Part shown: positions 1,194-46,408 of the stretch, piece by piece
How positions within the stretch are numbered: position 1 is the first letter of the stretch
Layout of the letters: every line of letters starts with the position of its first letter
Assembly: GCF_044704955.1 (NCBI RefSeq)
Contig: NC_091980.1
Location: forward strand, 25,358,001-25,422,000
Direction: 5' to 3'
From: Pristiophorus japonicus
Lineage: Eukaryota
Length of the DNA stretch: 64,000 nt
Position numbers and translations under genes: made by a program
Notes under the pieces: generated by a model
Told to the model about the DNA's origin: nothing
Database searches by the model: none
The model's input: only the letters and a program-made list of their open reading frames with translations

Positions 1194-1207
1194 TTAACAT
1201 TTGTCAC
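1194..1207 (-). CDS. Possible terminal micro-exon (G-D-K-C-stop)
   Basis: Long polypyrimidine tract plus AG at 1209-1208, in-phase GT GAC AAA TGT TAA, then AATAAA at 1185-1180. The preceding intron would be only 58 nt. Confidence 0.35.
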
Positions 1208-1265
1208 CTTGAAGAAGAGAAAAATAAGAGAAAATAAAACAAATAGCAATGTTCGGTTTCACTAC

Positions 1266-1322
1266 CTGGTGAATTTTTCTGAAAAGCAATCGATCCGTAA
1301 TGAATATCTTCTCTTTCTGTGT
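1266..1322 (-). CDS. Cytoplasmic exon 3 (IHYGSI, ITIM-like)
   Basis: 57 nt, phase 1/1, ttccctgcAG acceptor, CAG|GTAGTG donor. DTEREDIHYGSIAFQKNSP. Confidence 0.78.
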
Positions 1323-1477
1323 CTGCAGGGAATAAGATGGAAATAAAGGATGTGTATCTATATATATCGTGGCTGAACATATCCCAAAGCAAGTAATGAA
1401 TTACTTTCGAAGTGGAAGTAATGTTGGCAGATAAACAAACACCATTCAAGGTCCCGAAAGCAGGAAATGAGACAACA

Positions 1478-1780
1478 ACCAGTTAATCTTTTGTGGGGAT
1501 GGTGGTTGAGGGAAGAATTTTGTCAGGATAACACCGTGCTCACCATCAATAGATACAATGATATCTTTAATATTCACCAAAAAGGTCTCAACTAAAAGAC
1601 AGCACTTTCGAAAATACAGTAATCCCCTGAAGTGTCAGTAAAGAGTACAGGCTCGATGGACAGAATGACCTCCTTATGTGCTTTAACCATTCTATGATTC
1701 TATGATTCTATGAAAGTCTGAAGTGGGGCTTGAACCCACAAATGTCTGTTTCCAACATTACAATGCTGCCAAGTTGACTC
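1478..1780 (-). mobile_element. Deu-domain SINE relic with an inserted CR1 tail fragment
   Basis: Reverse complement resembles the Deu-SINE sequence at 23.7-24.3 kb; (ATTCTATG-like)n tail at ~1689-1712. Confidence 0.55.
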
Positions 1781-2379
1781 ATAAATTGGAAAATCAACAA
1801 TTCTGTGGCTGCAGATTTACTCACCAATGTAAATTAAAAACATAGCTCACGAATCATAATGTCTTTTCCAATTTTATTATCTTTACCCCACCTCTCCTGA
1901 TTCTCACTGGGCTCTGGTTCCACAAGTACTGACAGTCCTCCAGTATATAACTCAAATGTTGATTCTTCATGTGTGAGCCTGGATATGAAGTGTTGGGAAG
2001 CGATAGGATCATGTGGAGTCTCAAAGCCGCACGTGATCCTGACATCTGCACTTGTTGTTACTTGTTTACTTTATTTTAATGATTCATATTATTTCTAAAC
2101 AGCCATTCCTGTTGCAAACTTGTGATATACACAATCAGTAAAGTGACTGAATAAATAGATCTGTATTGTGCTTGAAGCCTTTTATACTGGACCAACATCA
2201 CAAAGATCTATTTTACTGAAGGTGGTTAAAGTATTTCAGAGTCTAACATTACATATCTGAAGAGCTTCCAAGCCGAAGTATGAAACTAGAACCAACATTT
2301 TAACTCAATGAACTCTGACAATTTCTATGTTAACAATACCTACACAGAGAGAGCCACATAATATGATTTATCTACTTAC

Positions 2380-2457
2380 CGTCTTCTTTTGCCTTTCTAT
2401 TGACAGTTGCATATTCAGCAAAATGACTTGTCTCAGGCACCGGCATCTCGTTATCTT
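2380..2457 (-). CDS. Cytoplasmic exon 2 (AEYATV, ITIM/ITSM-like)
   Basis: 78 nt, phase 1/1, ttttccAG acceptor, G|GTAAGT donor. EDNEMPVPETSHFAEYATVNRKAKED. Confidence 0.8.
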
Positions 2458-2957: not shown

Positions 2958-5900
2958 TAGCTGGATATCTAGATAGGAATAGTGCAATCAAGCAGACGCA
3001 GCATGGATTCATGAAGGGGAAATCATGTTTAACTAATTTTCTGGAATTATTTAAGGATATAACGAGCATGGTGAATAGAGGTGTACCGATGGATATGGTG
3101 TATTTAGATTTCCAAAAGGCATTCGATAAGGTGCCACACAAAAGGTTACTGCAGAAGATAGAGGTATGCGGAGTCAGAGGAAATGTATTAGCATGGATAG
3201 AGAATTGGCTGGCGAACAGAAAGCAGAGAGTCGGGATAAATGGGTCCTTTTCGGGTTGGAAATCGGTGGTTAGTTGTGTGCCACAGGGATCGGTGCTGGG
3301 ACCACAACTGTTTACAATATACATTGATGACATGGAAGATGGGACAGAGTGTAGTGTAACAAAATTTGCAGATGACACAAAGATTAGTGGGAAAGCGGGT
3401 TGTGTAGAGGACACAGACAGGCTGCAAAGAGATTTGGATAGGTTAAGCGAATGGGCTAAGGTTTGGCAGATGGAATACAATGTCGGAAAGTGTGAGGTCA
3501 TCCACCTTGGGAAAAAAAAACAGTAAAAGGGAATATTATTTGAATGGGGAGAAATTACAACATGCTCCGGTGCAGAGGGACCTGGGGGTCCTTGTACATG
3601 AAACTCTTTTGAGTTTACCTGCAAAACATAAAAACATTAAACGGTGCCACCCGACCTGGGTGACACTCCAGACATTTACAAGGCCCCTTTTTTTTTCCCC
3701 CCCTTTTTTTTTGTGTTTTTTTTTTGTGTTTTTCTTTTTTTTTTTGTTGTTTTTTTTTGGGCACTAAAATGACAATTTTTCCCCAGTGCCCCCTATAAAA
3801 GGGAAGGGGACACTAAAAGCACCGGAAATTAAAACAAATTAACTTTAAAACGTAAAATCAAATTAAAATTTGGTTGCCGGGCGTGATGATGCACTCCAGT
3901 CCCTCCGGTGCCCACCTCTCGCGGAAGGCCGCGAGCGTACCGGTGGACACCGCGTGCTCCATCTCCAAGGACACCCTGGACCGGATGTAAGAGCGGAAGA
4001 GAGGCAGGCAGTCAGGTTGAACGACCCCCTCGACCGCCCGCTGCCTGGACCGGCTGATGGCACCCTTGGCCGTGCCCAGGAGCAGTCCTACGAGGAGGCC
4101 TTCGGACCTACCCGCTCCCCTCCGCACAGGGTGCCCAAAGATCAGGAGAGTGGGACTGAAGTGCAGCCAGAATTTCAGGAGCAGCCCCTTCAAATAGTGG
4201 AACAGGGGCTGCAACCTCGTGCATTCAATAAAAACATGGAACACGGACTCCTCCAGACCGCAGAAATTGCAGGCGGCCTGGGAGTCCGTGAACCGGCTTA
4301 AAAATTTGTTGCACGGCACTGCTCCGTGCACCACCCTCCAGGCCAAGTCCCCGATGAATAGTGGGAGGACCCCTGCGTAGAGTGCCCTCCATCGGGGACC
4401 CCCGCCTCCTCCGGACGGCAAGATGGTACGCCATGGCGTGTCCGGACGGCCGGCGAGGATGGCAAAGTTGAGGGTGTGCAGGAGCAGCCCGTACAGGAAA
4501 CCCCTCCGCGCGGAACTGAAAGGCACGGAGGGGATTTCCCGGAGGCGGCTCAAGTTGTGAGGCGCCGGCCCCCGAGGGAGGTTCCGGGGTTTGGCGCCGA
4601 TGAGGAATTCCGTCCGGACGGGGGTCAGTTCGGACGGGATCTCCCCACGTGCTTGAGCCTCCTCGATGCACCTAATGGAGTCAGGGCCCAGAGCTGTTTT
4701 TAGCGACTCGATGGCATCGGCCGCGTGGCGGACGTTTGCAGAATTTAGGCGCCGCGCCAGCGTGTCTGGCGCCATCCAGCCCGCTCCTCCGCCATCGAGC
4801 AGGTCCCTGACCCTGGTCACCTCACCAGCCACAGCCCTCTCTTCCGACCGCCACATAAAGCCTCGGCCGTGGAGGTACGGATTCCCGAGCAGCGGTTCCT
4901 GCAGGACGGCCGCCACTCCAGCCGGCGGAGAGCTGCGCTTGGTGGAGACTTTGTTCCAGACCCTGATGAGTTCCCTGTAAAAGACAGGCAGCTCCCGGAG
5001 GGCGGTCCTGGCACCCCCCAAGTTCACAAACAGGAGCTGCGTGTCATAATTGAGGTCGAGCTGCTGGCGGAAGAAATACCTCGCCAGAGCACACCACCTA
5101 GGAGGGGGCTCGACGTAAAGGTATCTCTGCAGGGTCTGAAGACGGAAAGTCGCGAGCTGGGCGCTGACGCACACCAACGACTGACCGCCCTCCTCAAGCG
5201 GGAGACTCAAGACCGCAGCAGAGACCCAGTGCTTCCTGTTGTTCCAGAAGAAGTCCACCAGCTTCTTCTGTATCTTGGCGACAAACGCAGGGGGAGGGGT
5301 CAAAGTGACCAGCCGGTACCACAGCATTGCGGCCACCAGCTGGTTTATGACTAGCGCTCGACCCCTGTAGGACAGCACTCGGAGCAGTCCTGTCCAGCGC
5401 CCTAGGCGAGCGGCGACCTTGGCCTCCAGCTCCTGCCAGTTCGCCGGCCAGGCTCCCTCGTCGGGGCTAAGGTAGACTCCCAGATAGAGGAGATGGGTCG
5501 TGCTCCAGGCAAAAGGCCTGAGCTCCTCCGGCAGGGAGTCCACCCGCCACTGACCCACCAGGAGTCCGGAACATTTCTCCCAGTTGATCCTGGCGGAGGA
5601 CGCGGCCGAGTAAATCTCCTGGCACTCACGCATCCTCCGCAGGTCAGCGGGATCCTCTACCGCAAGGAGCACGTCATCGGCGTAAGCCGAGAGGACGACC
5701 TCCACGCCCGGCCCTTGCAGAGCCAGTCCCGTCAACCTCGTCCGCAAGAGGCGCAGGAAAGGCTCCACGCAAACAGCATATAACTGGCCGGACATGAGGC
5801 ATCCCTGGCGCACCCCTCTCCTAAAGCGAAGGGGCGCCGTCAAGGACCCGTTAACCTTAATCAGACACTCCGCGGCCCCTTGTACATGAATCCCAAAAAG

Positions 5901-6597: not shown

Positions 6598-6607
6598 TAA
6601 ATTAAGT

Positions 6608-8912
6608 CCTAATAAAAGATCCTCGAGGAATGAGTGATCACAGTATGGTTGAATTTGTAATACAGATTGAGGGTGAGGAAGTAGTGTCTCAAAATGAGCG
6701 TACTATGCTTAAACAAAGGGGACTACAGTGGGATGAGGGCAGAGTTGGCTAAAGTAGACTGGAAACATAGACTAAATGGTGGCACAACTGAGGAACAGTG
6801 GAGGACTTTTAAGGAGCTCTTCCATAGTGCTCAACAAAAATATATTCCAGTGAAAAAGAAGGGTGGTAAGAGAAGAGATAACCAGCCGTGGATAACCAAG
6901 GAAATAAAGGATAGTATCAAATTAAAAACCAATGCGTAGAAGGTGGCCAAGGTCCGTGGGAAACTAGCAGATTTGGAAAATTTTGAATGACAGCAAAGAA
7001 TGACCACGAAAGCAATAAAGAAAGGAAAGATAGATTACGAAAGTAAACTTGCGCTAAACATAAAAACAGATAGTAAAAGCTTTTACTGATATATAAAACG
7101 GGAAACAGTGACTAAAGTAAATGTTGGTCCCTTAGAAGATGAAAAGGGAGATTTAATAATGGGAAATGTGGAAATGGCTGAGACCTTAAACAATTATTTT
7201 GCTTCGGTCTTCACAGTGGAAGACACAAAAACCATGCCAAAAATTGCTGGTCACGGGAATGTGGGAAGGGAGGACCTTGAGACAATCACTATCACTAGGG
7301 AGGTAGTGCTGGACAGGCTAATGGGACTCAAGGTAGACAAGTTCCCTAGTCCAGATGAAATGCATCCCAGTGTATTAAAAGAGATGGCAGAAGTTATAGC
7401 AGATGCATTCGTTATAATCTACCCAAATTCTCTGGACTCTGGGGAGGTACCAGCGGATTGGAAAGCAACTAATGTAACGCCTCTGTTTAAAAAAGGGGGC
7501 AGACAAAAGGCAAGTTAGTTTAACTTCTGTAGTGGGGAAAATGCTTAAAGCTATCATTAAGGAAGAAATAGCGGGACATCTAGATAGGAATAGTGCAATC
7601 AAGCAGACGCAACATGGATTCATGAAGGGGAAATCATGTTTAACTAATTTACTGGAATTCCTTCAGGATATAACGAGCATGGTGGATAGAGGTGTACCGA
7701 TGGATGTGGTGTATTTAGATTTACAAAAGGCATTCGATAAGGTGCCACACAAAAGGTTACTACAGAAGATAAAGTTACGCGGAGTCAGAGGAAATGTATT
7801 AGCATGGATAGAGAATTGGCTGGCTAACAGAAAGCAGAGAGTTGGGATAAATGGGTCCTTTTCGCGTTGGAAATTGGTGGTTAGTGTTGTGCCACAGTGT
7901 TTGGTGCTGGGACCACAACTGTTTACAATATACATAGATGACCTGGAAGAGGGGAAAGAGTGTAGTGTAACAAAATTTGCAGATGACACAAAGATTAGTG
8001 GGAAAGCGGGTTGTGTAGAGGACACAGAGAGGCTGCAAAGAGATTTAGATAGATTAAGCGAATAGGCTAAGGTTTGGAAGATGGAATACAATGTTGGAAA
8101 ATGTGAGGTCATCCACCTTGGAAAAAAAAACAGTAAAAGGGAATATTATTTGAATGGGAATAATTACAACATGCTGAGGTGCAGAGGGACCTGGGGGTCC
8201 TTGTGCATGAATCCCCAAAAAGTTAGTTTGCAGGTGCAGCAGGTAATCAGGAAGGCGAATGGAATGTTGGCCTTCATTGAGAGAGGGATGGAGTACAAAA
8301 GCAGGGAGGTCCTGCTGCAACTGTATAGGGTATTGGTGAGGCCGTACCTGGAGTACTGAGTGCAATTTTGATCACCTTTCTTAAGGAAGGATATACTACC
8401 TTTGGAGTGGGTACAGAGACGATTCACTAGGCTGATTCCGGAGATGAGGGGGTTATCTTATGATGATAGATTGAGTAGACTGGGTCTTTACTCGTTGGAG
8501 TTCAGAAGGATGGGGGGTGATCTTAGAGAAACATTTAAAATAATGAAAGGGATAGACAAGATAGAGGCAGAGAGGTTGTTTCCACTGGTCGGGGAGACTC
8601 GAACTAGGGGGCACAGCCTCAAAATACGGAGGAGCCAATTTAAAACCGAGTTGAGAAAGAATTTCTTCTCCCAGAGGGTTGTGAATCTGTGGAATTCTCT
8701 GCCCAGGGAAGCAGTTGAGGCTAGCTCATTGAATGTATTGAAGTCACAGATAGATAGATTTTTAACCAATAAGGGAATTAAGGGTTACGGGGAGCGGGCA
8801 GGTAAGTGGAGCTGAGATCAGCCATGATCTTGTTGAATGGCAGAGCAGGCTCGAGGGGCTAGATGGCCTACTACTGTTCCTAATTCTTATGTTTCTTATG
8901 TTTCTTATGTTT
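6608..8912 (+). mobile_element. 5'-truncated CR1 LINE
   Basis: ORF2 fragments from the EN end through RT to a (TTCTTATG)n tail; stops and frameshifts. Confidence 0.93.
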
Positions 8913-8914
8913 CT

Positions 8915-10738
8915 TCTTGTGATTTAGTAAAATCGGAAACTAGGGTTTTCAATCTAAGCAAAGCAAACTACGAAGGGATGAGGGTCGAATTGGTTAACGC
9001 CGAATGGGAAACTACATTAAAAGTTATGAAGGTAGATGAGCAATGGCTAGCCTTTAAAGAATTAATACATAATTTACAACAAATATACATTCCTGTAAGG
9101 CACAAAAACCCCACAGTAAAAGTGATCCAATCGTGGCTAACAAGAGAAGTTAAAGATAGTATTAGATCAAAGAAAGAGCAGTAAACCTGAGGATTGGGAG
9201 GATTTTAGAATTCAGCAAAGGGGGATCAAGAAATTGGTGAAGAAAGGGAAAATCAAATATGAGAGTAAACTAGTGACATACATAAAAACAGACTGTAAAT
9301 GCTTCTATCGGTATACAAAAAGAAAAATGTTAGCAAAAGTAAATATGAATCCCTTACAGGCTAAGGTAGGAGAAATTATAATGGGGAATATGGAAATGGC
9401 AGAGAAATTAAAGAAATACTTTGTGTTCATCCTCACAGAAGAAGCCGCAAAAAACCTCCCTGAACTAGTGGAGAACCAAAAGTCTAGCAAGCATAAGAAA
9501 CATAAAGAAATTAATATTAGTAACAAAATAGTACTGGAGAAATTAATGGGTCTGGAATTCAATATATTCCCTGTGCCTGATGGCCTACATCCGAGGGTTT
9601 TGAAAGAGTTGGCTATAGAGATAGTGGATGCATTGGTTGTCATCTTCCAAAATTCCATAGATTCTAGAATCTATGCAAAGTAACCCAACTTTTTAAGAAA
9701 CGAGGGAAAGAGAAAGCGGGGAACTACAGATCAGTTAACCTGACATCAGTAGTAGGGAAAATTATAGAATCTATTATTAAGGATGTGGTAATAGGGCACT
9801 GAGAAAATATTAATAGGATTGGGGAAAGTCAACTTGGATTTGAAATGGAAATCATATTTGACAAATCTGTTGGAGTTTTTTTGAGGTTGTAACGAGCAGA
9901 ATAGATGAGGGGGAACCAGTGGATGTGGTGTATTTGGATTTTCAAAAGGAATTCAGTAAGTTGCCACACAAGAATTTATTAAAAAGAATTAGTGCTCATG
10001 ATATTGGGGGCAATATACTCGAATGGATTGAGGATTGGTTAACCGTCAGGCAACAGAATAGGAATAAACATGTCATTTTTGGGTAGGCAGACTGTAACTA
10101 GTGGAGTACCACAAAGATCAGTGTTTGGGCCTTAGTTATTCAGAATCAAAATCAATGATTTGAATGAGAAGACCAAATTTTATATATCCAAGTTTGCTGA
10201 AGATACAAAACTAGGTGGGAATGCAAGTTGTGAGGAGGATTCAAAGAGGCTTCAAAGGGATATATAAGGGCTAAGTGAGTGGGCAAGAACATGGCAAATG
10301 GAATATATTGTGGAGAAATGTGATGTTATCCACTTTCGTAGGAAATATAGAAAAGTATTTTTTAAATGGTGAGAAATTGGGAAATGTTGTTTTTCAGAGG
10401 GACCTGGGTGTTCATGTACATGAATCACCAAAAGTTAAAATGCAGGTACAGCAAGAAGTTAAGAAAGCAAATGGTATGTTGACTTTTATTACAAGATGAT
10501 TTGAGTATAAGAGAGAGATGTTTTACTGCAATTATATAGGGCCCTGGTGAGACCATACCTGGAGTATTGTGTAGAGTTTTGATCTCATTACCTAAGGAAG
10601 GATATACTTGCCATAGAGGGAAGGCAATGAAGGTTGACTAGACTGATTCCTGGGATGGGGGGATTGCTCTATAAGAAGAGATTGAGCAGACTATGCCTTC
10701 ATTCTCTATAGATTAGAAAAATGGGAGGTGATCTGATT
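8915..10738 (+). mobile_element. Older CR1 LINE (continuation of 2876-2957 and 6597-6607)
   Basis: Degenerate ORF2; uninterrupted equivalent at 21601-22952. Confidence 0.88.
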
Positions 10739-17050: not shown

Positions 17051-17603
17051 CTCCTGATCTCGCTCTTGGCCCATGCTGCGTCTTCCATGGGCCATGACCC
17101 CACTGCTAGTCCAGGCTGCGCCACTCCTGGGTCTCGACCTCAATGCTCCTGTCGACCTTATTGCTGGGTCCCGACCTCACTCCTGGGTCCCGCCCTCGCT
17201 CCTGGGTCCTGCCCTCGCTCCTGGGTCCCGCCCTCGCTACTGGGTCCCGACCTCGCTCCTGGGTCCCACCCTCGCTCCTGGGTCCCGACCTTGCACCTGA
17301 GTCCCGACCTCGCTCCTGGGTCCCGAACTCACTCCTGGGTCCCGCCCTCGCTCCTGGGTCCCGCCCTCGCTCCTGGGTCCCGACCTCGCTCCTGGGTCCA
17401 GCCCTCACACCTGCGTCCCGACCTCGCTCCTGTAATCGGACCTCGCACCTGGGTCCTGACATCGTTCCTGTGACCGTACCTCGCTCCTGGGTCCCGAACT
17501 CCCTCCTGAATCCTGACCTTGCTCCTGGATCCTGACCTCGCACCTGGGTCCTGACCTTGCTCCTGGGACCAAACCTTGCTGGCCCTCCGAACCTCGCTCC
17601 TGG
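17050..17603. repeat. 19-bp minisatellite (CCTCGCTCCTGGGTCCCGA)n
   Basis: More than 20 tandem degenerate units, directly upstream of the minus-strand RTE 5' UTR. Confidence 0.92.
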
Positions 17604-19835
17604 GTCCAGTGCCTGGTCTGCCCTCAAAGCCTCCGTAATTAGCACCTGTGATGAGACGCTTGGTCATTTCACCAGGAAACATCAAGACTGGCTTGACGAA
17701 AACAACCAAGAGATCCAGGAGCTAATAAGCCGCAAGCGCAAGGCATTCTTGAACTGTAAACAGCCACACAACTTGAGAGCAAGAAAGCAGCTCTATAGAC
17801 ATCTGAAGGCCAAGTTCCAACTTAAAAGTCGCGACCTAAAGAACAGATGGTGGGTGGAAAAAGAGCTGGAGATCCAGCAACAATCTGACAACCACGACGT
17901 GCGTGGATTCTTTATTGTAGTCAAGACCACCTACGGCCCAAGCACCCAACATTCTACCCCATTGAGGGTCAAGAAGGAAGAGGTACTCATCAAGGACAGA
18001 GAGGCAGTCAGTGCCCATGGAAGGAGCATTTCGAAGATATCCGTAAACGAGACTCTGTCTTTGACGCGAGTGGCCTTGACTCCATCCTGCTGCACGCTAC
18101 CCGTCACCACGTCAGCACAACCCCAGCCCGGCATGAGGTTGAAAAGGCCATCTGACAACTGAAGAACAACAAGGTCTCAGGAGCAGATGGAATCCCCGCC
18201 GAAGCACTAAAGCATGGCAGAGAAGCACTATTGGCATGATTCCATGAATTAATTTCTCTTATTTGGAAGGAAGTGAGTAGGCCAGGGGATCTCAGAGAAT
18301 TGTGGCCATCTTCAAGAAAGGTGACAAGTCCAATTGCAGTAAATACAGACGATTTTCTCTGCTGTCTGGCACAGGGAAAGTCTTCACAAGAATCCCCTTC
18401 AATCACCTTCTCCCAGTGGCTGAAGAGCTCCTCACAGAGTCGCAATGCGGATTCCGCCCACTAAGGGGCACAATGGACATGATCTTCACTGTGCACCAAA
18501 TTGAAGAAAAGAGCAGGGAGCAGCACCAGCCTCTGTACATGGCCTTCTTTGGCCTCACAAACTGGGAGGGATTATGGATTGTCCTCCTCAAGCTCGGCTG
18601 GCCTCAAAAGTTCGGCACAATCCTCCAGCTGTTTCACGATGACATGCAAGCCGTGATACTGACTAACGGATCCAACACAGACTCAATACACGAGTGGACC
18701 ATGTCAAGCAAGGCTGTGTCATCGCACCAATGCTCTTCTCAATCTTCCTTGCTGCAATGCTCCATCTCAACCTCAATAAGCTCCCCGCTGGAGTGGAGAT
18801 AATCTACAGAACAAACGGGATACTGTTCAACCATTGTCCCCTCCAGTCCAGGTCAAAGCTCATCCCAGCATCTTTCATTGAATTACGGTATGGAAACGAC
18901 GGTTGCATTTGTGCACTCAGAGGTCGAACTCCAAACCATCGTCAATACTTTCACCGAAGCATAAGAGAGTACACTAAACATCAGTAAGACAAAGGTTCTC
19001 TACCAACCTGTCCCCACCACACAGTACTGCCCCGTGATTATCACGATCCATGACGAGGCCTTGGACAATGTGGACCATTTTCCACACCTTGGCAGCCTAT
19101 TGGCAACAAGGGCAGATTTAGATAACGAAGTCCAACACAACCTTCAGTGTGGCAATGCAGTCTTCGATCATCTGAGGAAGAGAGTGCTTCAAGAGCATAA
19201 CCTCAAACCCAGCACCAAGCTCATGCTCTACAGAGCAGTGGTGTTATCCACCCTCCTAGATGCTACAGAGATATCGGTTATGTACAGCAGGCACCTCAAA
19301 GCACCGGAGAAGTGTCACCAATGCTGCCTCTGCAAGATCCTGCAAATCCATTGGCAGGATAGGTGCTCAGGCCAACATCCCCAGCATCGAAGCATTGACC
19401 TCGCTAGTTCAGCTCTGACGGATAGGCCACATCGTCCGCATGCCCGATACTAGACTCCCAAAACAAGTGCTCTGCTCAGAGCTCCAACACGGCAAGCGAG
19501 CCCCAGGTGGGCAGAGGAAACACCACAAGTGCACCCTCAAAGCCTCCTTGAAAAAGTGAAACATCCCCACCCACACTGGGAATCCCTGGCCCAAGACCAC
19601 TCAAAGTGGAGGAGAAGCATCCGGGAAGTCTTTTCGCAGGCAGCACACCGAAGCCAAGCGCAAACAGTGGAAGGAGCACACGACAATCCAAGCCCCACCC
19701 ATCCGTCCCTCCAGCCACCGTCTACTCCACCTGTGACAGAGAATGTCGGTCCCGTATTGGACTCATCAGTCACCTGAGAGCTCACATTAAGTGGGAACAA
19801 GTCATCCTCGTTTCCGATGGATTGCCTAAGAAGAA
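17604..19835 (+). mobile_element. RTE LINE RT and C-terminal part
   Basis: ESQCGFRPLRGTMDMIF, VKQGCVIAPMLF, C-terminal SRIGLISHLR; frameshifted. Confidence 0.9.
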
Positions 19836-22800
19836 GAGGAGCAGTAAATTTTTGAACTGGGAAATGGTTTGCGTCCCCAGCCGCAAAATTCACCAGCTGA
19901 GCCCTGAGTGTGGAGCGGAGCACTAAGGGAGGCGATCCATCATTCTATTTCAGCTGAGCAAATAAAAATCCCGAGGTAAACAGCTGGCCTCTGCGCACTC
20001 TCAGAGAGGATTCAGTGGGGAAAAAAATCTGAAAAAAAACACTAAAAACAGACCTAGTATTTTACTGACACCACATCTGCATGAATCGCAAAAATAAGAA
20101 AATTAAAACAATCGCATTTATCCCAGGTAGACATTCCTTCCCTCATTGCGGCTGATACAACTGGAACCGCCAGCTTTCACAGGCGATCCCACTAGGGGGC
20201 GCTACAGATCGGGCAAGGTTCAAATTTAGACTTGGTGTTGCAACCAGGGGTGTTGCACACCAGCTCGCCTCTCCCAGGAGGTACTGCTCCGTGCCCCCAC
20301 AACCCAGGCTCCAAATGTCCCGATGGGACACTGGATGATGGCCGTCTGCCCGAAAATGTTCCTGCACCATTACCATCCCTCCGGGGCAAAAACAGAGGTG
20401 GCAATGAACCGAAAATATAGCCCAATGAGTTTTATAATCCAGCATTAACATTTGTCACCTTGAAGAACACAAAAATAAGAAAAACAAATAGCAATATTTG
20501 GCTTCACTAGCTGGTGAATTTTTCTGAAAAGCGATCGATCCGTAATGAATATCTTCTCTTTCTGTGTCTGCAGGGAATAAGATGGAAATAAAGGATGTGT
20601 ATCTATATATATCGTGGCTGAACATATCCCAAAGCAAGTAATGAATTACTTTCAAAGTGGAAGTACTGTTGGCAGATAAACAAACACCATTCAAGGTCCC
20701 GAAAGCAGGAAATGAGACAACAACCAATTAATCTTTTGTGGGGATGGTGGTTGAGGGAAGAATTTTGTCAGGATAACACCGTGCTCATCGTCAATAGATA
20801 CAATGATATCTTTAACATTCACCAAAAAGGTCTCAACTGAAAGACAGCACTTTCGAAAATGCAGTAATCCCCTGAAGTGTCAGTAAAGAGTACAGGCTCG
20901 ATGGACAGAATGGCCTCCTTATGTGCTTTAACCATTCTATGATTCAATGATTCTATGAAAGTCTGAAGTGGGGCTTGAACCCACAAATGTCTGTCTCCAA
21001 AATGACAATGCTGCCAAGTTGACTCATAGATTGGAGAATCAACAATTCTGTGGCTGCAGATTTACTAAACAATGTAAATTAAAAACATAGCTCACGAATC
21101 ATAATGTCTTTTCCAATTTTATTATCTTTACCCCACCTCTCCTGATTCCCACTGGACTCTGGTTCCACAAATACTGACAGCCCTCCAATATATATCTCAA
21201 ATGTTGATTCTTCATGTGTGAGCCTGGATATGAAGTCTTGGGAAGCGATAGGATCATGTGGAGTCTCGAAGCCGCACGTAATCCTGACATCTGCACTTGT
21301 TGCTACTTGTTTACTTTCTTTTAAAGATTCATATTATTTCTAAACAGCCATGCCTATTGCAAACTTGTGGTATACACAATCAGTAAAGTGACTGAATAAA
21401 TAGATCTGTATTGTGCTTGAAGCCTTTTATACTGGACCAACATCACAAAGATCTATTTTACTGAAGATGGTTCAAGTATTTCAGAGTCTAACATCACATA
21501 TCTGAAGAGCTTCCAAGCCAAAGTATTAAACTGGAACCAACATTTCAACTCAATGAACTTTGACAGTTTCTATGTTAACAATACCTACACAGAGATGATA
21601 GACCATAATATGATAGAATTTTAAATTAAGTTTGATTGTGATTTAGTAAAATCCGAAACTAGAGTTTTCAATCTAAACAAAGCAATCTACGTAGGGATGA
21701 GGGTCGAACTGGCTAACATAGATTGGGAAACTAGATTAAAAGGTATGATGGTAGATGAGCAATGGTTAGCCTTGAAAGAATTAATACATAATTTACAACA
21801 AATATACATTCCTGTAAGGCACAAAAACCCCACAGGAAATGTGGTTCAATCGTGGCTAACAAGAGAAGTTAAAAATATATTGGATCAAAAAAGGAGCAGT
21901 AAACGTGAGGATTGGGAGGATTTTAGAATTCAGCAAAGGGGGATCAAGAAATTGGTGAAGAAAGGGAAAATCAAATATGAGAGTAAACTAGCGAGAGACA
22001 TAAAAACAGACTGTAAAAGCTTCTATGGGTATGTAAAAAGGAAAAGATTAGCAAAAGTAAATGTGAGTACCTTACAGGCTAAGGTAGGAAAAATTATAGT
22101 GGGGAATATGGAAATGGCAGAGAAATTAAAGAAATACTTTGTGTCCATCCTCACAGAAGAAGCCGCAAAAAACCTCCCTGAACTAGTGGAGAACCAAAAG
22201 TCTAGCGAGAATAAGGAACGTAAAGAAATTAATATTAGTAACAAAATAGTACTGGAGAAATTAATGGGACTGGAAGCCAATAAATTCCCTGGGCCTGATG
22301 GCCTGCATCCTAGGGTTTTGAAAGAGGTGGCTATAGAGATAGTGGATGCATTGGTTGTCATCTTCCAAGATTCCATAGATTCTAGAATCTATACAAAGTA
22401 ACCCCATTTTTTTCGAAACGAGGGAGAGAGAAAGCGGGGAACTACAGATCAGTTAATCTGACATCAGTAGTAGGGAAAAAGATAGAATCTATTATTAAGG
22501 ATATGGTAACAGGGTTCTGAGAAAATATTAATAGGATTGGGGAAAGTCAACTTGGATTTATGAAATGGAAATCATGTTTGACAAATCTGTTTGAGTTTTT
22601 TTGAGGTTGTATCTAGCAGAATAGATGAGGGGGAACCAGTGGATGTGGTGTATTTGAATTTTCAGAAGGAATTCGATAAGTTGCCACACAAGAGGTTATT
22701 AAACAAAATTAGTGCTCATGGCATTGGGGGTAGTAATATACTCAAATGGATTGAGGATTGGTTAACCATCAGAAAACAGAGAGCAGGAATAACTGTCATT

Positions 22801-23450: not shown

Positions 23451-23549
23451 CTTGCATTTGCTGTATTTCATTAGCATTTGAATAAAGCTGAGCTGCATCT
23501 TCTATATTATCTCCTGGTTGTAGAGGTTTCTGTCTTTGATTTCCTAAAC
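23451..23549 (-). CDS. Cytoplasmic exon 1 (LYSN motif)
   Basis: 99 nt, phase 1/1, ...atgaacAG acceptor (an in-frame alternative AG lies 6 nt further in), AAG|GTAACA donor. GLGNQRQKPLQPGDNIEDAAQLYSNANEIQQMQ, in non-repeat sequence. Confidence 0.75.
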
Positions 23550-27214: not shown

Positions 27215-27316
27215 CTGCAACATTGCGCTTTCTCAGACACAGCACCACTGCCAGGATAATGATAAGGAAAAGACTCCCGAAAATAACAGCATTGATGTGT
27301 TTAAAAGTGTAATCAT
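27215..27316 (-). CDS. Exon of Ig-superfamily receptor: transmembrane segment
   Basis: 102 nt, phase 1/1, ttcttctgacAG acceptor, CAG|GTAAGA donor. DDYTFKHINAVIFGSLFLIIILAVVLCLRKRNVA is an uncharged hydrophobic helix followed by an RKR stop-transfer sequence. Confidence 0.88.
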
Positions 27317-38523: not shown

Positions 38524-40323
38524 TCATGAAGACAAATGTAGGTCCCTTGCAGTCGAATTCAGGTAAATTTATAATGGGGAATAAAGAACGGCAGGCCAAT
38601 TGAACAAATACTTTGGTTCTGTCTTCACGAAGGAAGACACAAATAACCTTCCGAAAATACTAGGGGACCGAGCGTCTAGTGAGAAGGAGGAATTGAAGGA
38701 TATCCTTATTAGGCGGGAAATTGTGTTAGGGAAATTGATGGGATTGAAGGCCGATAAATCCCCGGGGCCTGATAGTCTGCATCCCAGAGTACTTAAGGAA
38801 GTGGCCCTAAAAATAGTGGATGCATTGGTGATCATTTTCCAATCGTCTATCGACTCTGGATCAGTTCCTCGGGACTGGAGGGTAGCTAATGTAAAATCAC
38901 TTTTTAAAAAGGGTGGGAGAGAGAAAGCAGGTAATTATAGATCGGTTAGTCTGACATCAATGGTGGGGCAAATGTTGGAATCAATTATTAAGGATAAAAT
39001 AGCAGCGCATTTTGAAAGCAGTGACAGGATCGGTCCAAGTTAGCATGGATTTATGAAGGGGAAACCATGCTTGACAAATCATCTGGAATTTTTTGAGGAT
39101 GTAACTAGTAGAATGGACAAGGGAGAACCAGTGGATGTGTATTTGGATTTTCAAAAGGCTTTTGACAAGGAACCACATCAAAGCACATGGTATTGGGGAT
39201 AATATACTGACGTGGATAGAGAACTGGTTGGCAGACAGGAAGCAGAGAGTCAGGATAAACTGGTCCTTTTCAGAATGGCAGGAAGTGATTAGTCGAGTGC
39301 TGCGGGGCTCAGTGCTGGGACCCCAGCTCTTTACAATATACATCAATGATTTAGATGAAGGAATTGAGTGTAATATCTCCAAGTTTGCAGATGACGCTAA
39401 ACTGGGTGGCGGTGTGAGCTGTGAGGAGGACGTTCAGAGGCTGCAGGGTGACTTGGACAGGTTAGGTGAGTGGGCAAATGCATGGCAGATGCAGTATATT
39501 GTGGATAAATGTGAGGTTATCCACTTTGGGGGCAAAAGCACGAAGACAGAATATTATCTGAATGGCGGCAGATTAGGAAAAGGGGAGTTGCAACGAGACC
39601 TGGATGTCATGGTTCATCAGTCATTGAACGTTGGCATGCAGGTACAGCAGGCAGTGAAGAAGGCAAATTATATGTTGGCCTTCATAGCTAGGGGATTTGA
39701 GTATAGGAGCAGGGAGGTCTTACTGCAGTTGTACAGGGCCTTGGTGAGGCCTCACCTGGAATATTGTGTTCAATTTTGGTCTCCTAATCTGAGGAAGGAT
39801 GTTCTTGCTATTGAGAGAGTGCAGCGAAGGTTCAACAGACTGATTCCCGGGATGGTCGGACTGACATATGAGGAGAGACTGGATGAACTGGGCCTTTATA
39901 CATTGGAGTTTAGAAGGATAATAGGGGATCTCATAGAAACATACAAGATTCTGACGGGACAGGACAGGTTAGATGTAGGTCGATTGTTCCCGATGTTGGG
40001 GAAGTCCAGTACCAGGAGACACAGTCTTAGGATAAGGGGTAGGCCATTTAGGACTGAGATGAGGAGAAACTTCTTCACTCAGAGAGTTGTTAACCTGTGG
40101 AATTCCCGACCGCAGAGAGTTGTTGATGCCAGTTCATTGGATATATTCAAGAGGGAGTTAGATATGGCCCTTATGGCTGAAGGGATCAAGGGGTATGGAG
40201 AGAAAGCAGGAAAGGGGTACTGAAGGAATGATCAGCCATGATCTTATTGAATGGCGGTGCAGGCTCGAAGGGCCGAATGGCCTACTCCTGCATCTATTTT
40301 CTATGTTTCTATGTTTCTATGTT
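38524..40323 (+). mobile_element. CR1 LINE nested in the opposite-strand CR1
   Basis: ORFs 38600-39043 and 39135-40223; (TTTCTATG)3 tail. Confidence 0.93.
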
Positions 40324-42369: not shown

Positions 42370-45002
42370 ATCATTGTGGGTGGAGATTAGAGATAGTAAG
42401 GGGAAAAAGTCACTGGTGGGCGTAGATTATAGCCTCCCAAATAAAAACTTCATGGTGGGATAGGCAATAATCAAGGGAATAATGGAGGCATGTGAAAAAG
42501 GAACGGCAGTAATCATGGGGGATTTTAACCTACATATCGATTGGTCAACTCAAATCGCACGGGGTAGCCGTGAGGAGGAATTCATAGAATGCATACAGGA
42601 TTATTTCTTAGAACAGTATGTAATAGAACCTACAAGGGAGCAAGCTATCTTAGATCTGGTCCTGTGTAATGAGACAGGAAAAATAAACGATCTCCGAGTA
42701 AAAGATCCTCTCAGAATGAGTGATCACAGTATGGTTGAATTTGTAATACAGATTGAGGGTGAGGAAGTTGTGTCAGAAACGAGCGCACTATGCTTAAACA
42801 AAGGGGACTATAGTGGGATGAGGGCAGAGTTGGCTAAAGTAGACTGGAAACAAAGACTAAACGGTGGCACAATTGAGGGACAGTGGAGGACTTTTAAGGA
42901 GCTCTTTCATAGTGCGCAACAAAAATATATTCCAGTGAAAAAGAAGGCGGTAAGAGAAGGGATAACCAGCCGTGGATAACCAAGGAAATAAAGGAGAGTA
43001 TAAAATCAAAGACCAATGCGTATAAGGTGGCCAAGGTTAGTGGGAAACTAGAGGATTGGGAAAATTTTAAACAACAGCAAAAAATGACTAAAAAAGCAAT
43101 AAAGAAAGGAAAGATAGATTTCGAAGGTAAACTTGCGCAAAACATAAAAACAGATACTAAAAGCTTTTACAGATATATAAAACGGAAAAGAGTGACTAAA
43201 GTAAATGTTGGTCCCTTAGAAGATGAGAAGGGGGATTTAATAATGGGAAATGTGGAAATGGCTGAGACCTTAAACAATTATTTTGCTTCAGTCTTCACAG
43301 TGGAAGACACAAAAACCATGCCAAAAATTGCTGGTCACGGGAATGTGAGAAGGGAGGACCTTGAGACAATCACTATCACTAGGGGGGTAGTGCTGGACAG
43401 GCTAATGGGACTCCAGGTAGATAAGTCCCCTGGTCCGGATGAAATGCATCCCAGGATATTAAAAGAGATGGCGGAAGTTATAGCAGATGCATTCGTTATA
43501 ATCTACCAAAATTCTCTGGACTCTGGGGAGGTACCAGCGGATTGGAAAGCAGCTAATGTAACGCCTCTGTTTAAAAAAGGGGGCAGACAAAAGGCAGGTA
43601 ACTGTAGGCCGGTTAGTTTAACATCTGTAGTGGGGAAAATGCTTAATGAAATTTCTTCATTAAGGAAGAAATAGCGTGACATCTAGATAGGAATAGTGCA
43701 ATCAAGCAAACGCAGCATAGATTCATGAAGGGGAAATCATGTTTAACTAATTTACTGGAATTCTTTAAGGATATAATGAGCATGGTGAATAGAGGTGTAC
43801 AGATGAATGTGGTGTATTTAGATTTCCAAAATGCATTCGACAAGGTGCCACACAAAAGGTTACTGCAGAAGATAGAGGTACGCGGAGTCAGAGGAAATGT
43901 ATTAGCATGGATAGAGAATTGGCTGGCGAACAGAAAGCAGAGAGTCGAGATAAATGGGTCCTTTTCGGGTTGGAACTTGGTGGTTAGTGGTGTGCCACAG
44001 GGATCGGTGCTGGGACCACAACTGTTTACAATATACATAGATGACCTGGAAGAGGGGACAGAGTGTAGTGTAACAAAATTTGCAGATGACACAAAGATTA
44101 GTGGGAAAGCGGGTTGTGTAGAGGACACAGAGAGGCTGCAAAGAGATTTAGATAGGTTAAGCGAATGGGCGAAGGTTTGGCAGATGGAATACAATGTCGG
44201 AAAGTGTGAGGTCATCCACCTTAGAAAAAAAAACAGTAAAAGGGAATATTACTTGAATGGAGAGAAATTACAACATGCTGAGATGCACAGTGACCTGGGG
44301 GTCTCAAAAAGTTAGTTTGCAGGTGCAGCAGGTAATCAGGAAGGCGAATGGAATGTTGGCCTTCATTGTGAGAGGGATGGAGTACAAAAGCAGGGAGGTC
44401 CTGCTGCAACTGTATAGGATATTGGTAAGGCCGCACCTGGAGTACTGCGTGCAGTTTTGGTCACCTTACTTAAGGAAGGATATACTAGCTTTGGAGGTGT
44501 TACAGAGACGATTTACTCGGCTGATTCCGGAGATGAGGGGGTTACCTTATGATGAGAGATTGAGTAGACTGGGTCTTTACTCGTTGGAGTTCAGAAGGAT
44601 GAGGGGTGATCTTATAGAAACATTTAAAATCATGAAAGGGATAAACAAGATAGAGGCAGAGAGGTTGTTTCCACTGGTAGGGGAGGCTAGAACTAGGAGG
44701 CACAGCCTCAAAATATAGGGGAGCCAATTTAAAACCGAGTTGAGAAGGAATTTCTTCTCCCAGAGGGTTGTGAATCTGTGGAATTCTCTGCCCAAGGAAG
44801 CAGTTGAGGCTAGCTCATTGAATGTATTCAAGTCACAGATGGATAGATTTTTAGCCAATAAGGGAATTAAGGGTTATGGGGAGGGGGCGGGTTAGTGGAG
44901 CTGAGTCCACGGCCAGATCAGCCATGATCTTATTGAATAGCGGAACAGGCTCGAGGGGCTAGATGGCCTACTCCTGTTCCTAATTCTTATGTTCTTATGT
45001 TC
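42370..45002 (+). mobile_element. 5'-truncated CR1 LINE
   Basis: IMGDFN endonuclease through RT to a (TTCTTATG)2 tail; same subfamily as 2958 and 6608. Confidence 0.95.
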
Positions 45003-45721
45003 AGCGTTTTTTGTACAACGAAGTGTTTTCTAGGCCTTTTCAGAGGGCAGTTAAGAGTCAACCACATTGCTGTGCATCTGGAGTCACCTGTAGGCCAGAC
45101 CAGGTAAGGATGTCAGAGGTCCTTCCCTAAAGAACATTAGTGAACCAGGTGGGTTTTCAACAACAATGTAATAGTATCAGTCACTTTTACTGATGGTGGC
45201 ATTTTATTCACGACTTCTTTAATAAACTGAATTTAAATTCCCCAGCGGCCATCTCTGGATCATTAGTCCAGGTCTCTGGATTACTACTCCAGTAGCGTAA
45301 CCATTCTGCTACCATACCCACAGAGAAGAAGAGTTTCTCTGTGCCTAAACAGTGGAGTGTTTCAATTGCAATATTTTCAGCTGGGAATTATTTTTTGCTC
45401 TAATTTTTTGCATTCTGATTGATTCTGTGTCAGAAATCCAATAGAAATGACTTCTGTACCATTGAATTGGCAAAATTAAATGCATGCCCTGTCTCAGTGA
45501 GTTTACCAGAGCGTGGTTGAGACACACAGACCAGGAAAGTTCCAAGCTCGATCCCAGGCTGTGCTGAGTTATCTCAGGGTAGATTTCCTGAGGCTCTGCA
45601 TCACTGTAGAGCCTCACACACAGGATATAAAGGAGGGGTTACTCCTGGCAACAAGAACAATAAGTGACAAGAATTTTCTATCGAGATTATAAGATTAAAG
45701 AGCAAACCCTGAGTCACTTAC

Positions 45722-45991
45722 CACTGGGCTCTAGATAGTACGGGACTAAAACCTGGGGCCGATTTTGATCAAACAAAGCACATATCCAGTTCCCTCTGCC
45801 TCTATCAGCTTTCTGAATAATCAGTCGCAATGATTTCTCTTCCCCATTCCGTCCATTTAATATTTTCTCTCCAACAGTTTTGCCATCACTACTGATCCAA
45901 ACCAGTCTCATTGATTCAGTGACATCAGAGACAGAGCAGGTCAGGGTAACGGTGTCTCCCTCAGTCTCTGCATCAGATGGTTCAGCTGTGA
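45722..45991 (-). CDS. Exon of Ig-superfamily receptor: C2-type Ig domain with F-strand WxC
   Basis: 270 nt, phase 1/1, acceptor tttccacAG after a 75-nt intron, donor G|GTAAGT. Translation VTAEPSDAETEGDTVTLTCSVSDVTESMRLVWISSDGKTVGEKILNGRNGEEKSLRLIIQKADRGRGNWICALFDQNRPQVLVPYYLEPS. Confidence 0.92.
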
Positions 45992-46066
45992 CTGTGGAAA
46001 CAGGAAAATCATTTAGATTTTAAACAATGACTTTCTCGAAAACAACTTCAAGTTTCTGTCTCCTAC

Positions 46067-46408
46067 CTTTAACTGTGATTAGGTTAATGGTCACCATTTT
46101 ATTTGGTCCCAGAGAACATGTGTAAACTCCTGCATCTTCAAACAGTACAGGGACAATCCTCACACTGAACTTATCGCCATTAAAATGTCCCATTGTGGGC
46201 ACCAGTCGACTCACAAAGTAGGTCCTGTTTACATCGATAGGCTGAGATTTCGATGCAGTTGCTATTTTTTTCTCCTGATTTTGTAGATGACGTGAGCTCC
46301 AGGTCCAAGCAGCAGCTTTGTAAGTAGCAGAAACAGAATAGCAAATCAGGTCGAGTTCATTGCGATTTGTGCCTGACCGATAAAGTGTGTATCTCGTTTG
46401 ATATAAAT
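46067..46408 (-). CDS. Exon of Ig-superfamily receptor: V-set Ig domain
   Basis: 342 nt, phase 1/1, acceptor ...tctctatcgcAG, donor AAG|GTAGGA. Open translation xLYQTRYTLYRSGTNRNELDLICYSVSATYKAAAWTWSSRHLQNQEKKIATASKSQPIDVNRTYFVSRLVPTMGHFNGDKFSVRIVPVLFEDAGVYTCSLGPNKMVTINLITVK, with B-strand Cys, C-strand Trp and DAGVYTC. Confidence 0.92.

What the first reader, a model, noticed from the sequence alone, without database searches (positions are those of the whole stretch)
1194..46408. Hidden multi-exon V-C2-TM immune-type receptor with tyrosine signalling motifs, spread across ~45 kb of TEs
Seen: six minus-strand exons, all phase 1/1 with GT-AG sites and lengths divisible by 3 (342, 270, 102, 99, 78, 57 nt), join into one stop-free type I membrane protein: V-Ig, C2-Ig, uncharged TM, and a ~85-aa tail. 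The exons lie in the few non-TE islands. Established: one-domain-per-exon phase-1 structure is typical of IgSF receptors. Inference: this is a functional, probably poorly annotated cartilaginous-fish leukocyte receptor whose leader and possibly further N-terminal domains lie beyond 64000.
Basis: partly seen in the sequence, partly recalled or inferred. Interest (0 to 1): 0.9.

Follow-up and report, generated by a model that had tools for sequence, protein, structure and literature searches.

The report
Shark CD4-like inhibitory receptor gene
The six exons are real and form the rear two-thirds of a shark membrane receptor gene whose outer part folds like CD4/LAG-3 and whose tail carries inhibitory tyrosine motifs; it is one copy of a large, unnamed shark and ray gene family that databases list only as "uncharacterized protein".

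Summary
Observation confirmed. The six minus-strand exons (342, 270, 102, 99, 78, 57 nt) sit where the lengths imply. All are phase 1/1, AG/GT-bounded and open.

Predicted proteins from over 20 shark, ray and chimaera species match them in the same order: V, C2, TM, then three tail exons. Assembled contigs from four public runs skip exactly the 75-nt V-C2 intron. One contig joins the C2 exon to a TM-exon homologue.

The gene is incomplete in the window at both ends:
- Homologues are V-C2-V-C2, so these Ig exons are D3 and D4. D1, D2 and the leader are not in the 17.6 kb upstream.
- The last exon, which carries a second ITIM (VIYAQI) in homologues, is also absent. The end implied at 1194 is unsupported.
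- A 2.3-kb segmental duplicate places a second ITIM exon at 20511-20567, but its donor is dead (GT to CT).

The family has ITIM-tailed and Lys-TM members, so it looks like paired receptors. Its V-C2 module is closest in fold to CD4 D3-D4/D1-D2 and LAG-3, with the WxC motif in D4. It lacks the defining tail motifs of CD4 and LAG-3, so it is neither.

Verdict: a new member of a known kind, in an unnamed family. This copy's expression and ligand are untested.

The parts
46067..46408 (-). V-set Ig exon (342 nt, phase 1/1); corresponds to domain D3 of the V-C2-V-C2 homologues
   Evidence: Pfam V-set 29.4 bits. 82% identical to P0004 residues 235-347. Contig depth is bounded by the exon, and upstream loose ends encode a D2-like end.
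45992..46066 (-). 75-nt intron between the V and C2 exons (GT..AG)
   Evidence: The joint 45991->46067 'skips 75', with ends CT..AC on the + strand, is seen in contigs of all four runs laid.
45722..45991 (-). C2-type Ig exon (270 nt, phase 1/1), domain D4, with the WxC motif (GNWICALF) in strand F
   Evidence: Pfam ig 23.9 bits. 92% identical to P0120 residues 1-64. In the family profile this WxC aligns with the WxC of LAG-3 D2 and D4.
27215..27316 (-). Stalk, transmembrane and stop-transfer exon (102 nt, phase 1/1): DYTFKHINAVIFGSLFLIIILAVVLCLRKRNVA, no charged residue in the membrane span
   Evidence: tblastn 71-79% identity to homologues at the position right after D4. A contig of run X7 runs from the C2 exon end (45722) straight into DGYTFKHTNV, the homologue of this exon. 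Splice sites read.
23451..23549 (-). Cytoplasmic exon 1 (99 nt, phase 1/1): LGNQRQKPLQPGDNIEDAAQLYSNANEIQQMQ, carrying a YxN (Grb2-type) motif
   Evidence: 82-83% identical to P0006 and P0109. Splice sites read.
20511..20567 (-). Duplicate (copy B) of the ITIM exon. Acceptor and reading frame are intact, with one synonymous change, but the donor is CT instead of GT: a likely pseudo-exon
   Evidence: Alignment of the two copies and the sequence itself.
2380..2457 (-). Cytoplasmic exon 2 (78 nt, phase 1/1): DNEMPVPETSHFAEYATVNRKAKED, carrying an ITIM/ITSM-like EYATV
   Evidence: 96% identical to P0121 and P0140 of P. japonicus; also matches Chiloscyllium and Scyliorhinus proteins. Splice sites read.
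1266..1322 (-). Cytoplasmic exon 3 (57 nt, phase 1/1): TEREDIHYGSIAFQKNSP, a canonical ITIM (IxYxxI); copy A
   Evidence: 100% identical to P0121 residues 535-554. Splice sites read.
1..2367 (.). Segmental duplication, copy A (partner 19273-21614). It begins 13 nt downstream of the donor of cytoplasmic exon 2 and runs off the window
   Evidence: Self-blastn 89.5% identity over 2392 columns; repeats D8, D10, D14 and D15; alignment.
19273..21614 (.). Segmental duplication, copy B, lying in the intron between cytoplasmic exons 1 and 2
1194..1207 (-). The 14-nt 'GDKC-stop' piece implied by the finding's lower limit; not supported as an exon
   Evidence: In all ITIM-tailed homologues the 57-nt exon is followed by a last exon of about 37 codons (GSRH...SSVIYAQI...). 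That exon has no match anywhere in the window. The 14 nt are no better conserved between the two duplicate copies than the flanking intron.

Best explanation
The window holds the rear part of one gene on the minus strand: Ig domains D3 (V) and D4 (C2), the transmembrane exon and three of four tail exons. The gene is an inhibitory-type member of a large, unnamed chondrichthyan IgSF receptor family.

The family's ectodomain is V-C2-V-C2, and in some members eight domains. Its V-C2 module is a CD4/LAG-3-type rigid rod.

Likely mechanism, inferred from motifs:
- The ectodomain binds an unknown ligand.
- Src-family kinases phosphorylate the tail tyrosines.
- The ITIMs recruit SHP-1/SHP-2-type phosphatases and damp activating signals. 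One ITIM (IHYGSI) is in the window; a second (VIYAQI) lies in the missing last exon.
- The membrane-proximal YSN can dock Grb2.
- Paralogues with near-identical ectodomains but a lysine in the TM and a short tail would pair with DAP12/FcRgamma-type adaptors, giving an inhibitory/activating paired-receptor system.

Shown: the exons, their order, splicing of V-C2 and C2-TM in relatives' transcripts, the family's two tail types and the CD4-like fold. Inferred: signalling partners, ligand, cell type, and expression of this particular copy.
For: - Exon anatomy and splice sites.
- Pfam V-set and ig above cut-off.
- 57 homologues found with the V exon alone: 28 at E<=1e-10, best 82% identity. All named ones are elasmobranch 'uncharacterized protein'.
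- Collinear tblastn matches of full-length homologues to all six exons.
- Contigs from four runs are confined to the exons and skip the 75-nt intron. One continues from C2 into the TM-exon homologue, and others run from a D2-like end into the V exon.
- Family census: 63 ITIM-tailed and 18 Lys-TM among about 134 chondrichthyan representatives (alignment).
- The profile search of solved structures aligns D3end-D4(-TM) with LAG-3 D1end-D2 and D3end-D4-TM, including WxC.
- The AlphaFold model of the D3-D4 homologue P0010 has pLDDT 83.5 and a continuous strand across the two domains.
- Its best matches are human CD4 D1D2 (Foldseek E 2.3e-10, TM 0.72-0.75), rat CD4 D3D4 (Z 15.9, rmsd 2.5 A, 169 of 177 residues) and LAG-3 D3D4 (Z 12.2).
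Against: - No read or contig evidence was obtained for this exact copy. Most laid contigs are 90-99% alike, so they come from paralogues or relatives, and the runs are only guessed to be RNA.
- The leader, D1, D2 and the last exon are not in the window, so integrity of the whole gene is unknown.
- The tail junctions TM-cyt1, cyt1-cyt2 and cyt2-cyt3 rest on homologues' gene models only.
- The EYATV tyrosine is His or Asn in two sawshark paralogues, so not every motif is constrained.
- Binding of SHP, Grb2 or an adaptor is pure inference.
Confidence: 0.75

Rival explanations
1. It is a dead partial copy (pseudogene fragment) of the family. A D3-D4-TM-tail piece was left by duplication in a TE-rich region, without a leader, D1-D2 or a last exon.
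For: - No D1/D2/leader match in the 17.6 kb upstream and no last exon in the 1.3 kb downstream.
- 53.5% of the window is repeat.
- The tail region has been rearranged by a segmental duplication with a dead exon copy.
- No run holds more than a tenth of the stretch's words.
Against: - All six exons are open, with canonical and mostly strong splice sites and all Ig core residues in place.
- Introns of 18-21 kb occur inside the part that is visible, so missing end exons beyond a 64-kb window are expected.
- A few laid contigs are 99% or more alike.
Confidence: 0.15
2. The exons belong to two transcription units. V-C2-TM-cyt1 would be one gene ending near copy B at about 20.5 kb, and the exons at 2.4 kb and 1.3 kb would be the tail of another.
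For: - A second ITIM exon copy lies between cyt1 and cyt2.
- 21 kb separates cyt1 from cyt2.
Against: - Copy B has no usable donor, and no last-exon homologue follows it anywhere in the window.
- No Ig, leader or TM exon lies between 23.4 kb and 2.5 kb to start a second gene.
- Homologues have cyt1-cyt2-ITIM in one protein.
Confidence: 0.06
3. The family is better filed with CEACAM-like receptors than with the CD4/LAG-3/G6F group. CEACAMs have an N domain without a disulphide, C2 domains, an ITIM plus a C-terminal xIYxxV tail, paired activating forms and rapid expansion.
For: - CEA is the top profile hit among solved structures (1.3e-14), and the family's D1 F-G region aligns with the CEA N domain.
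- D1 has no conserved cysteines.
- NCBI auto-names a few members 'CEACAM-like'.
- CEACAM1-like clusters are among the nearest in the ESM Atlas.
Against: - The CEA score is a sum over six weak repeats.
- D3 is a V domain with a normal disulphide, which CEACAMs lack in that place.
- D4 has WxC.
- The two-domain fold match is to CD4 and LAG-3. No CEACAM chain is among the best 50 structural rows.
- The nearest named Atlas clusters are 'g6f-like'.
Confidence: 0.12

Closest known systems
CD4 / LAG-3 family (MHC class II co-receptor and checkpoint receptor)
   Same: - V-C2-V-C2 ectodomain in the homologues.
- One Ig domain per phase-1 exon.
- WxC in strand F of D4, aligned with the WxC of LAG-3.
- The V-C2 module is a rigid rod with a continuous strand. 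Its best structural matches are CD4 D3D4, CD4 D1D2 and LAG-3 D3D4.
   Different: - No Cx(C/H) LCK motif, so it is not CD4.
- No (F/Y)xxL(D/E) motif, and the tail is multi-exon rather than single-exon, so it is not LAG-3. The criteria are from PMC10768021.
- D2 has YxC, not WxC, and D1 lacks the disulphide.
- It is a multigene family with Lys-TM partners, whereas bona fide shark CD4 and LAG-3 are separate, auto-named genes (PMC10768021).
G6F / teleost G6f-like (thrombocyte collagen receptor)
   Same: - Four Ig domains, a single TM and a YxN motif as the first tail tyrosine.
- Later tyrosine motifs are split over consecutive exons (PMC3528668).
- 'g6f-like' clusters are the nearest named neighbours of the sawshark paralogue in the ESM Atlas (score 0.96; a lead only).
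   Different: - There is no canonical ITAM. YATV and YGSI are 15 residues apart, the first ends in V, and the motifs fit ITIMs instead.
- The tail is longer.
- No G6F sequence was available for a direct comparison.
- The bony-fish relatives I retrieved, such as salmonid P0200, also lack an ITAM.
Paired ITIM / charged-TM IgSF receptor families (CEACAM1/3, Siglec-CD33, SIRP, LILR/KIR, teleost NITR/LITR)
   Same: - ITIM xHYxSIxF followed by a C-terminal VIYAQI, the same layout as CEACAM1, Siglecs, PECAM-1 and PD-1.
- Sister genes with a basic TM residue and a short tail.
- Lineage-specific expansion, and tail exons that duplicate as in-phase cassettes.
   Different: The ectodomain is of the CD4/LAG-3 type rather than the domain types of those families. 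There is no sequence-level membership in any of them.

Membership tests
CD4 | Cx(C/H) LCK-binding motif in the cytoplasmic tail (PMC10768021) | tested here: not met
   None of the window's tail exons, nor the TM-exon tail, contains CxC or CxH. The paralogues' last exons have a single Cys in 'QCNK'.
CD4 / LAG-3 family | V-C2-V-C2 ectodomain | tested here: met
   Full-length homologues align as V-C2-V-C2, and the window's two Ig exons are D3 and D4. D1 and D2 of this copy are not in the window.
CD4 / LAG-3 family | WxC motif in strand F of both D2 and D4 | tested here: inconclusive
   D4 has WxC: NWICALF in the window, nearly invariant in the family, and aligned to the WxC of LAG-3. D2 of the homologues has YxC.
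CD4 / LAG-3 family | Rod-like V-C2 module with a continuous G/A strand, as in the CD4 crystal structures | tested here: met
   The AF2 model of homologue P0010 has a strand at 109-124 spanning D3/D4. Best matches: 1cid_A Z 15.9, CD4 D1D2 Z 14.7, LAG-3 D3D4 Z 12.2. This was tested on a homologue, not on the window's joined product.
CD4 / LAG-3 family | Genomic location in the conserved CD4-LAG-3 region | not testable with these tools
   The window holds only this gene and transposons; no flanking genes are available.
LAG-3 | (F/Y)xxL(D/E) motif in a tail encoded by a single exon (PMC10768021) | tested here: not met
   The tail is spread over at least four exons. Its tyrosine motifs are YSNA, YATV and YGSI, plus YAQI in homologues.
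G6F-like | Four Ig domains plus a YxN motif in the tail (PMC3528668) | tested here: met
   YSN is in the 99-nt exon. YxN is conserved across the family and its bony-fish relatives. The four Ig domains are seen in homologues.
G6F-like | Canonical ITAM Yxx(L/I)x6-12Yxx(L/I), split over two exons (PMC3528668) | tested here: not met
   YATV and YGSI lie in consecutive exons but are separated by 15 residues, and the first ends in V.
G6F-like | Direct sequence homology to G6F/G6fL and expression on thrombocytes | not testable with these tools
   No G6F or G6fL sequence could be fetched. The only pointer is the ESM Atlas neighbour 'g6f-like' at 0.96.
ITIM-bearing inhibitory receptors | (S/I/V/L)xYxx(I/V/L) in the tail of a receptor with an uncharged TM | tested here: met
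   IHYGSI is in the 57-nt exon and the TM has no charged residue. A second ITIM, VIYAQI, is in the homologues' last exon. Phosphatase binding was not tested.
CEACAM | N-terminal V-like domain without a disulphide, followed only by C2 (A/B) domains | tested here: inconclusive
   D1 of the homologues lacks conserved cysteines and aligns weakly to the CEA N domain. D3 is a disulphide-bonded V domain, and the fold matches favour CD4 and LAG-3.

The most novel reading that the evidence does not exclude
The family could be an undescribed third branch of the CD4/LAG-3(/G6F) lineage. In cartilaginous fish it would have expanded into dozens of paired inhibitory (ITIM) and activating (Lys-TM) receptors with four or eight Ig domains. 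Thinner relatives occur in coelacanth, bichir, sturgeon, eels and salmonids. If so, the CD4/LAG-3 rod module was first, or also, used by a germline-diversified innate-type receptor system, and these genes are the natural outgroup for asking how MHC class II co-receptors arose.
Probability: 0.35. Interest if true: 0.65.

Novelty: new member of a known kind. Interest (0 to 1): 0.45.

Why it matters
For this locus the result is a correct gene model. It covers part of a TE-swamped gene longer than 64 kb, notes a dead duplicate exon, and shows that both gene ends lie outside the window.

For the family, the point of interest is the combination of features. A CD4/LAG-3-type ectodomain is joined to classical ITIM tails, there are Lys-TM partner genes, and the family is greatly expanded in sharks and rays. 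I found no paper that describes it; databases call the members 'uncharacterized', 'obscurin-like', 'VCAM1-like' or 'CEACAM-like'.

It could inform the origin of CD4 and LAG-3, and the repertoire of shark innate-type paired receptors. It does not overturn anything known.

Tried and rejected
1. My first scan used the wrong codon offset for phase 1 and missed the Ig exons. I corrected this.

2. I first took two other open AG..GT intervals in the duplicated block as the 78- and 99-nt tail exons: 1887-1964 and 1593-1691, with twins at 21132-21209 and 20838-20936. No homologue matches them and one lies in SINE-like sequence. I rejected them in favour of 2380-2457 and 23451-23549.

3. I first read the donor of copy B as GC. 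The sequence shows CT.

4. Single-exon searches of solved structures gave only generic Ig hits.

5. A word-based search with the bichir relative found nothing but itself.

6. The bony-fish profile search returned only unnamed proteins, with no G6F name.

7. I searched for a Lys-TM exon, D1/D2 exons, a leader and the last exon in the window. None was found. Two leader-like ORFs at 54121 and 49932 have no homologue support.

8. The search for sequencing runs found no run holding more than 10% of the words and none on record as RNA.

9. Literature searches for the family turned up no description. The terms covered obscurin-like nurse shark, WxC, G6F, cartilaginous, V-C2-V-C2 and paired receptors in sharks.

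10. All searches were exon by exon or used natural homologues, and junction codons were read by eye.

Full report
**1. What is there**

The window is TE-rich shark-type DNA. By self-blastn 53.5% of it is repeated within itself. It carries LINE reverse transcriptases, an LTR-element pol and a DDE transposase fragment.

| Exon | Coordinates | Length |
|---|---|---|
| V | 46067-46408 | 342 nt |
| C2 | 45722-45991 | 270 nt |
| TM | 27215-27316 | 102 nt |
| cyt1 | 23451-23549 | 99 nt |
| cyt2 | 2380-2457 | 78 nt |
| cyt3 | 1266-1322 | 57 nt |

The splice sites, read directly, are good to strong. Pfam places the first exon in V-set (29.4 bits, cut-off 26) and the second in ig (23.9 bits, cut-off 21.8). 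The third encodes an uncharged membrane span followed by RKR.

All searches were per exon or used natural homologues, and junction codons were read by eye. The split codons give V, D, G, E and D at the five junctions, and three of the five (V, D, G) are the residues of the paralogue P0121 at those joints.

**2. Is it one gene?**

A full HMMER scan with the V exon alone found 57 relatives, 28 of them at E<=1e-10 and the best 82% identical. Those looked up are predicted 'uncharacterized proteins' of sharks, rays and the elephant fish, plus weaker ones in coelacanth, bichir, sturgeon and some teleosts.

In proteins of about 500 aa, the V exon aligns at residues of about 225-345. That makes it the third domain of a V-C2-V-C2 ectodomain.

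tblastn of the full-length homologues back onto the window hits exactly the six intervals, in order. P0062 from Chiloscyllium and P0078 and P0121 from Pristiophorus cover V, C2, TM, the 99-nt, the 78-nt and the 57-nt exon.

**3. Transcript evidence**

No run holds the stretch well, and none is on record as RNA. Even so, contigs from four runs of four different organisms were laid on 45600-46500.

- Their depth is confined to the two exons.
- All four runs contain a joint 45991->46067 that skips the 75-nt intron (GT..AG on the minus strand).
- One X7 contig runs from the C2 exon's last base into sequence encoding DGYTFKHTNV. This is the homologue of the window's TM exon (DDYTFKHINA) and identical to Heptranchias P0059.
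- Upstream loose ends at 46409 encode TGKADFYVDQ and TGSTNVDVDQ, the end of D2 in homologues.
- One X6 contig runs from D4 into a D1-like start, which is the eight-domain form.

Most contigs are 90-99% alike. They therefore show that the family is transcribed and spliced at these sites in relatives or paralogues. They do not show that this copy is expressed.

**4.

*(a) The gene is cut at both ends of the window.*
- No D1, D2 or leader match exists in 46409-64000.
- The last coding exon of all ITIM-tailed homologues has no match anywhere in the window. It has about 37 codons, GSRH...SSVIYAQI..., and carries a second ITIM.
- The finding's lower limit of 1194 can only be a 14-nt 'GDKC-stop' piece, which nothing supports.

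*(b) The block 1-2367 is duplicated at 19273-21614.* Identity is about 90-95%.
- The duplication starts 13 nt past the donor of the 78-nt exon.
- It puts a second copy of the ITIM exon at 20511-20567, inside the intron between the 99-nt and 78-nt exons.
- That copy keeps its acceptor and frame, with one synonymous change. Its donor is CT instead of GT, so it is most likely a dead exon.
- In-phase duplication of tail exons is a habit of the family. Heptranchias P0059 has the ITIM exon twice, and sawshark P0121 has the YSN exon twice.

**5. The family**

A profile search returned 147 relatives at E<=1e-5. The 120 best are all chondrichthyan, with four-Ig forms (about 430-600 aa) and eight-Ig forms (about 850-1030 aa).

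Among about 134 chondrichthyan representatives:
- 63 have the ITIM-type tail. Its layout is YxN, then EYATV-like, then xIHYxSIxF, then VIYAQI.
- 18 instead have a TM with a lysine (YLLVKLGIAVGL) and a short tail.

This is the signature of paired inhibitory and activating receptors.

The closest matches are P. japonicus proteins: the 57-nt exon at 100%, the 78-nt exon at 96%, C2 at up to 92% and V at 82%. None is identical. My data fit the window being a further paralogue in that species or a close relative, but I did not verify the species.

**6. Which known family?**

Evidence pointing to CD4/LAG-3:
- The profile of 13 full-length members hits LAG-3 (8.7e-14) and CD4 (3.5e-10) among solved structures.
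- The LAG-3 alignment pairs the family's D3end-D4(-TM) with LAG-3 D1end-D2 and D3end-D4-TM, with WxC on WxC.
- An AlphaFold model of the natural D3-D4-TM homologue P0010 (pLDDT 83.5) shows a continuous strand through both domains.
- Foldseek's top rows are human CD4 D1D2 (E 2.3e-10, TM 0.72-0.75), LAG-3 and rat CD4 D3D4. Fabs and TCRs score a TM of about 0.3.
- An independent all-against-all structural search puts rat CD4 D3D4 first (Z 15.9, rmsd 2.5 A, 169 of 177 residues), human CD4 D1D2 second (Z 14.7) and LAG-3 D3D4 at Z 12.2. Rows in between match one domain only, or both domains at a much higher rmsd.

So the module is of the CD4/LAG-3 type.

Membership in CD4 or LAG-3 proper fails on the defining tail features given in PMC10768021. 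There is no Cx(C/H) motif, no (F/Y)xxL(D/E) motif, and the tail is multi-exon. In addition, D2 has YxC and D1 has no disulphide.

Teleost G6f-like has four Ig domains, a YxN motif and an ITAM split over two exons (PMC3528668). It shares the YxN and the exon-split tyrosines with this family. Here, however, the two tyrosines are 15 residues apart and read as ITIM-like, so there is no canonical ITAM. The ESM Atlas puts 'g6f-like' clusters nearest to the paralogue P0121 (0.96). That is a lead and not a test, and I could not fetch a G6F sequence.

A CEACAM affinity is the main rival classification. It rests on the cysteine-free D1, the top summed hit to CEA and some automatic names. The fold results do not favour it.

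**7. How it most likely works**

The gene most likely encodes an inhibitory type I receptor.
- Ligand binding through the membrane-distal domains is inferred, and the ligand is unknown. CD4 and LAG-3 bind MHC class II; G6fL responds to collagen.
- Tail tyrosines are phosphorylated.
- IHYGSI and the downstream VIYAQI recruit tandem-SH2 phosphatases.
- YSN may recruit Grb2.
- The Lys-TM paralogues signal through acidic-TM adaptors.

Only the motifs and the existence of the two tail types are shown. The rest is inference from the established behaviour of ITIM and charged-TM receptor pairs.

**8. Verdict**

- The Ig exons are D3-D4 of a larger receptor.
- The 3' end is also missing from the window.
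- One ITIM exon copy is dead.

The gene is a new member of a known kind: an ITIM-bearing IgSF receptor with a CD4/LAG-3-type ectodomain. It sits in a large family that is present in public annotation but apparently undescribed in the literature I could search. Interest is moderate.

Noticed in passing
window 17164-17567: A 19-nt tandem repeat (CTGGGTCCCGACCTCGCTC, about 21 copies, 81% matches). It creates long spurious ORFs on both strands (PGARSGPRSE-type repeats) and many false 'exon' candidates in the AG..GT scan.
   Followed up: partly
window 28573-32780 (+): A decayed LTR-retrotransposon pol region: a gag-like ORF, a protease-like ORF, an RT fragment and an integrase core (rve, 48 bits), spread over several frames.
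   Followed up: partly
window 56357-58555 (-): An uninterrupted 732-aa LINE ORF with a reverse transcriptase domain (RVT_1, 112.7 bits). It is the longest open TE reading frame in the window. Many decayed copies of the same element occur elsewhere, for example at 7108-8815, 38600-40223, 43027-44718 and 61725-62900.
   Followed up: partly
window 3858-5843 (-): A GC-rich stretch (62% GC) with a 661-aa ORF carrying RVT_1 and zf-RVT. It is a different LINE type, inserted close to the 78-nt tail exon.
   Followed up: no
window 59139-60166: A 337-nt tandem repeat, 3 copies, 88% matches, unexplained. Its units resemble the 3' end of the 3858-5843 element (the ORF end ...RERWAPEGLECIITPGNQILI).
   Followed up: no
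window 52061-52375 (+): A fragment of a Harbinger/PIF-type DDE transposase (DDE_Tnp_4, 27.7 bits).
   Followed up: no
window 8917-10015 and 21636-22735: The TE that abuts the upper end of duplication copy B (21636 onward) is about 91-93% identical to a copy at 8917-10015. A TE-mediated event may have made the 2.3-kb duplication.
   Followed up: no
homologues P0059 (Heptranchias), P0121 and P0140 (Pristiophorus): Tail exons of this family duplicate as in-phase cassettes: the ITIM exon occurs twice in P0059 and the YSN exon twice in P0121. Isoform P0140 skips D2. The EYATV tyrosine is His in P0121 and Asn in P0118.
   Followed up: partly
run X6 contig ending at window 45729: In one organism a transcript contig continues from the D4 exon into a D1-like sequence (EFPNYIYF) instead of a TM exon. 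This matches the eight-Ig members of about 900-1000 aa seen in many species.
   Followed up: partly
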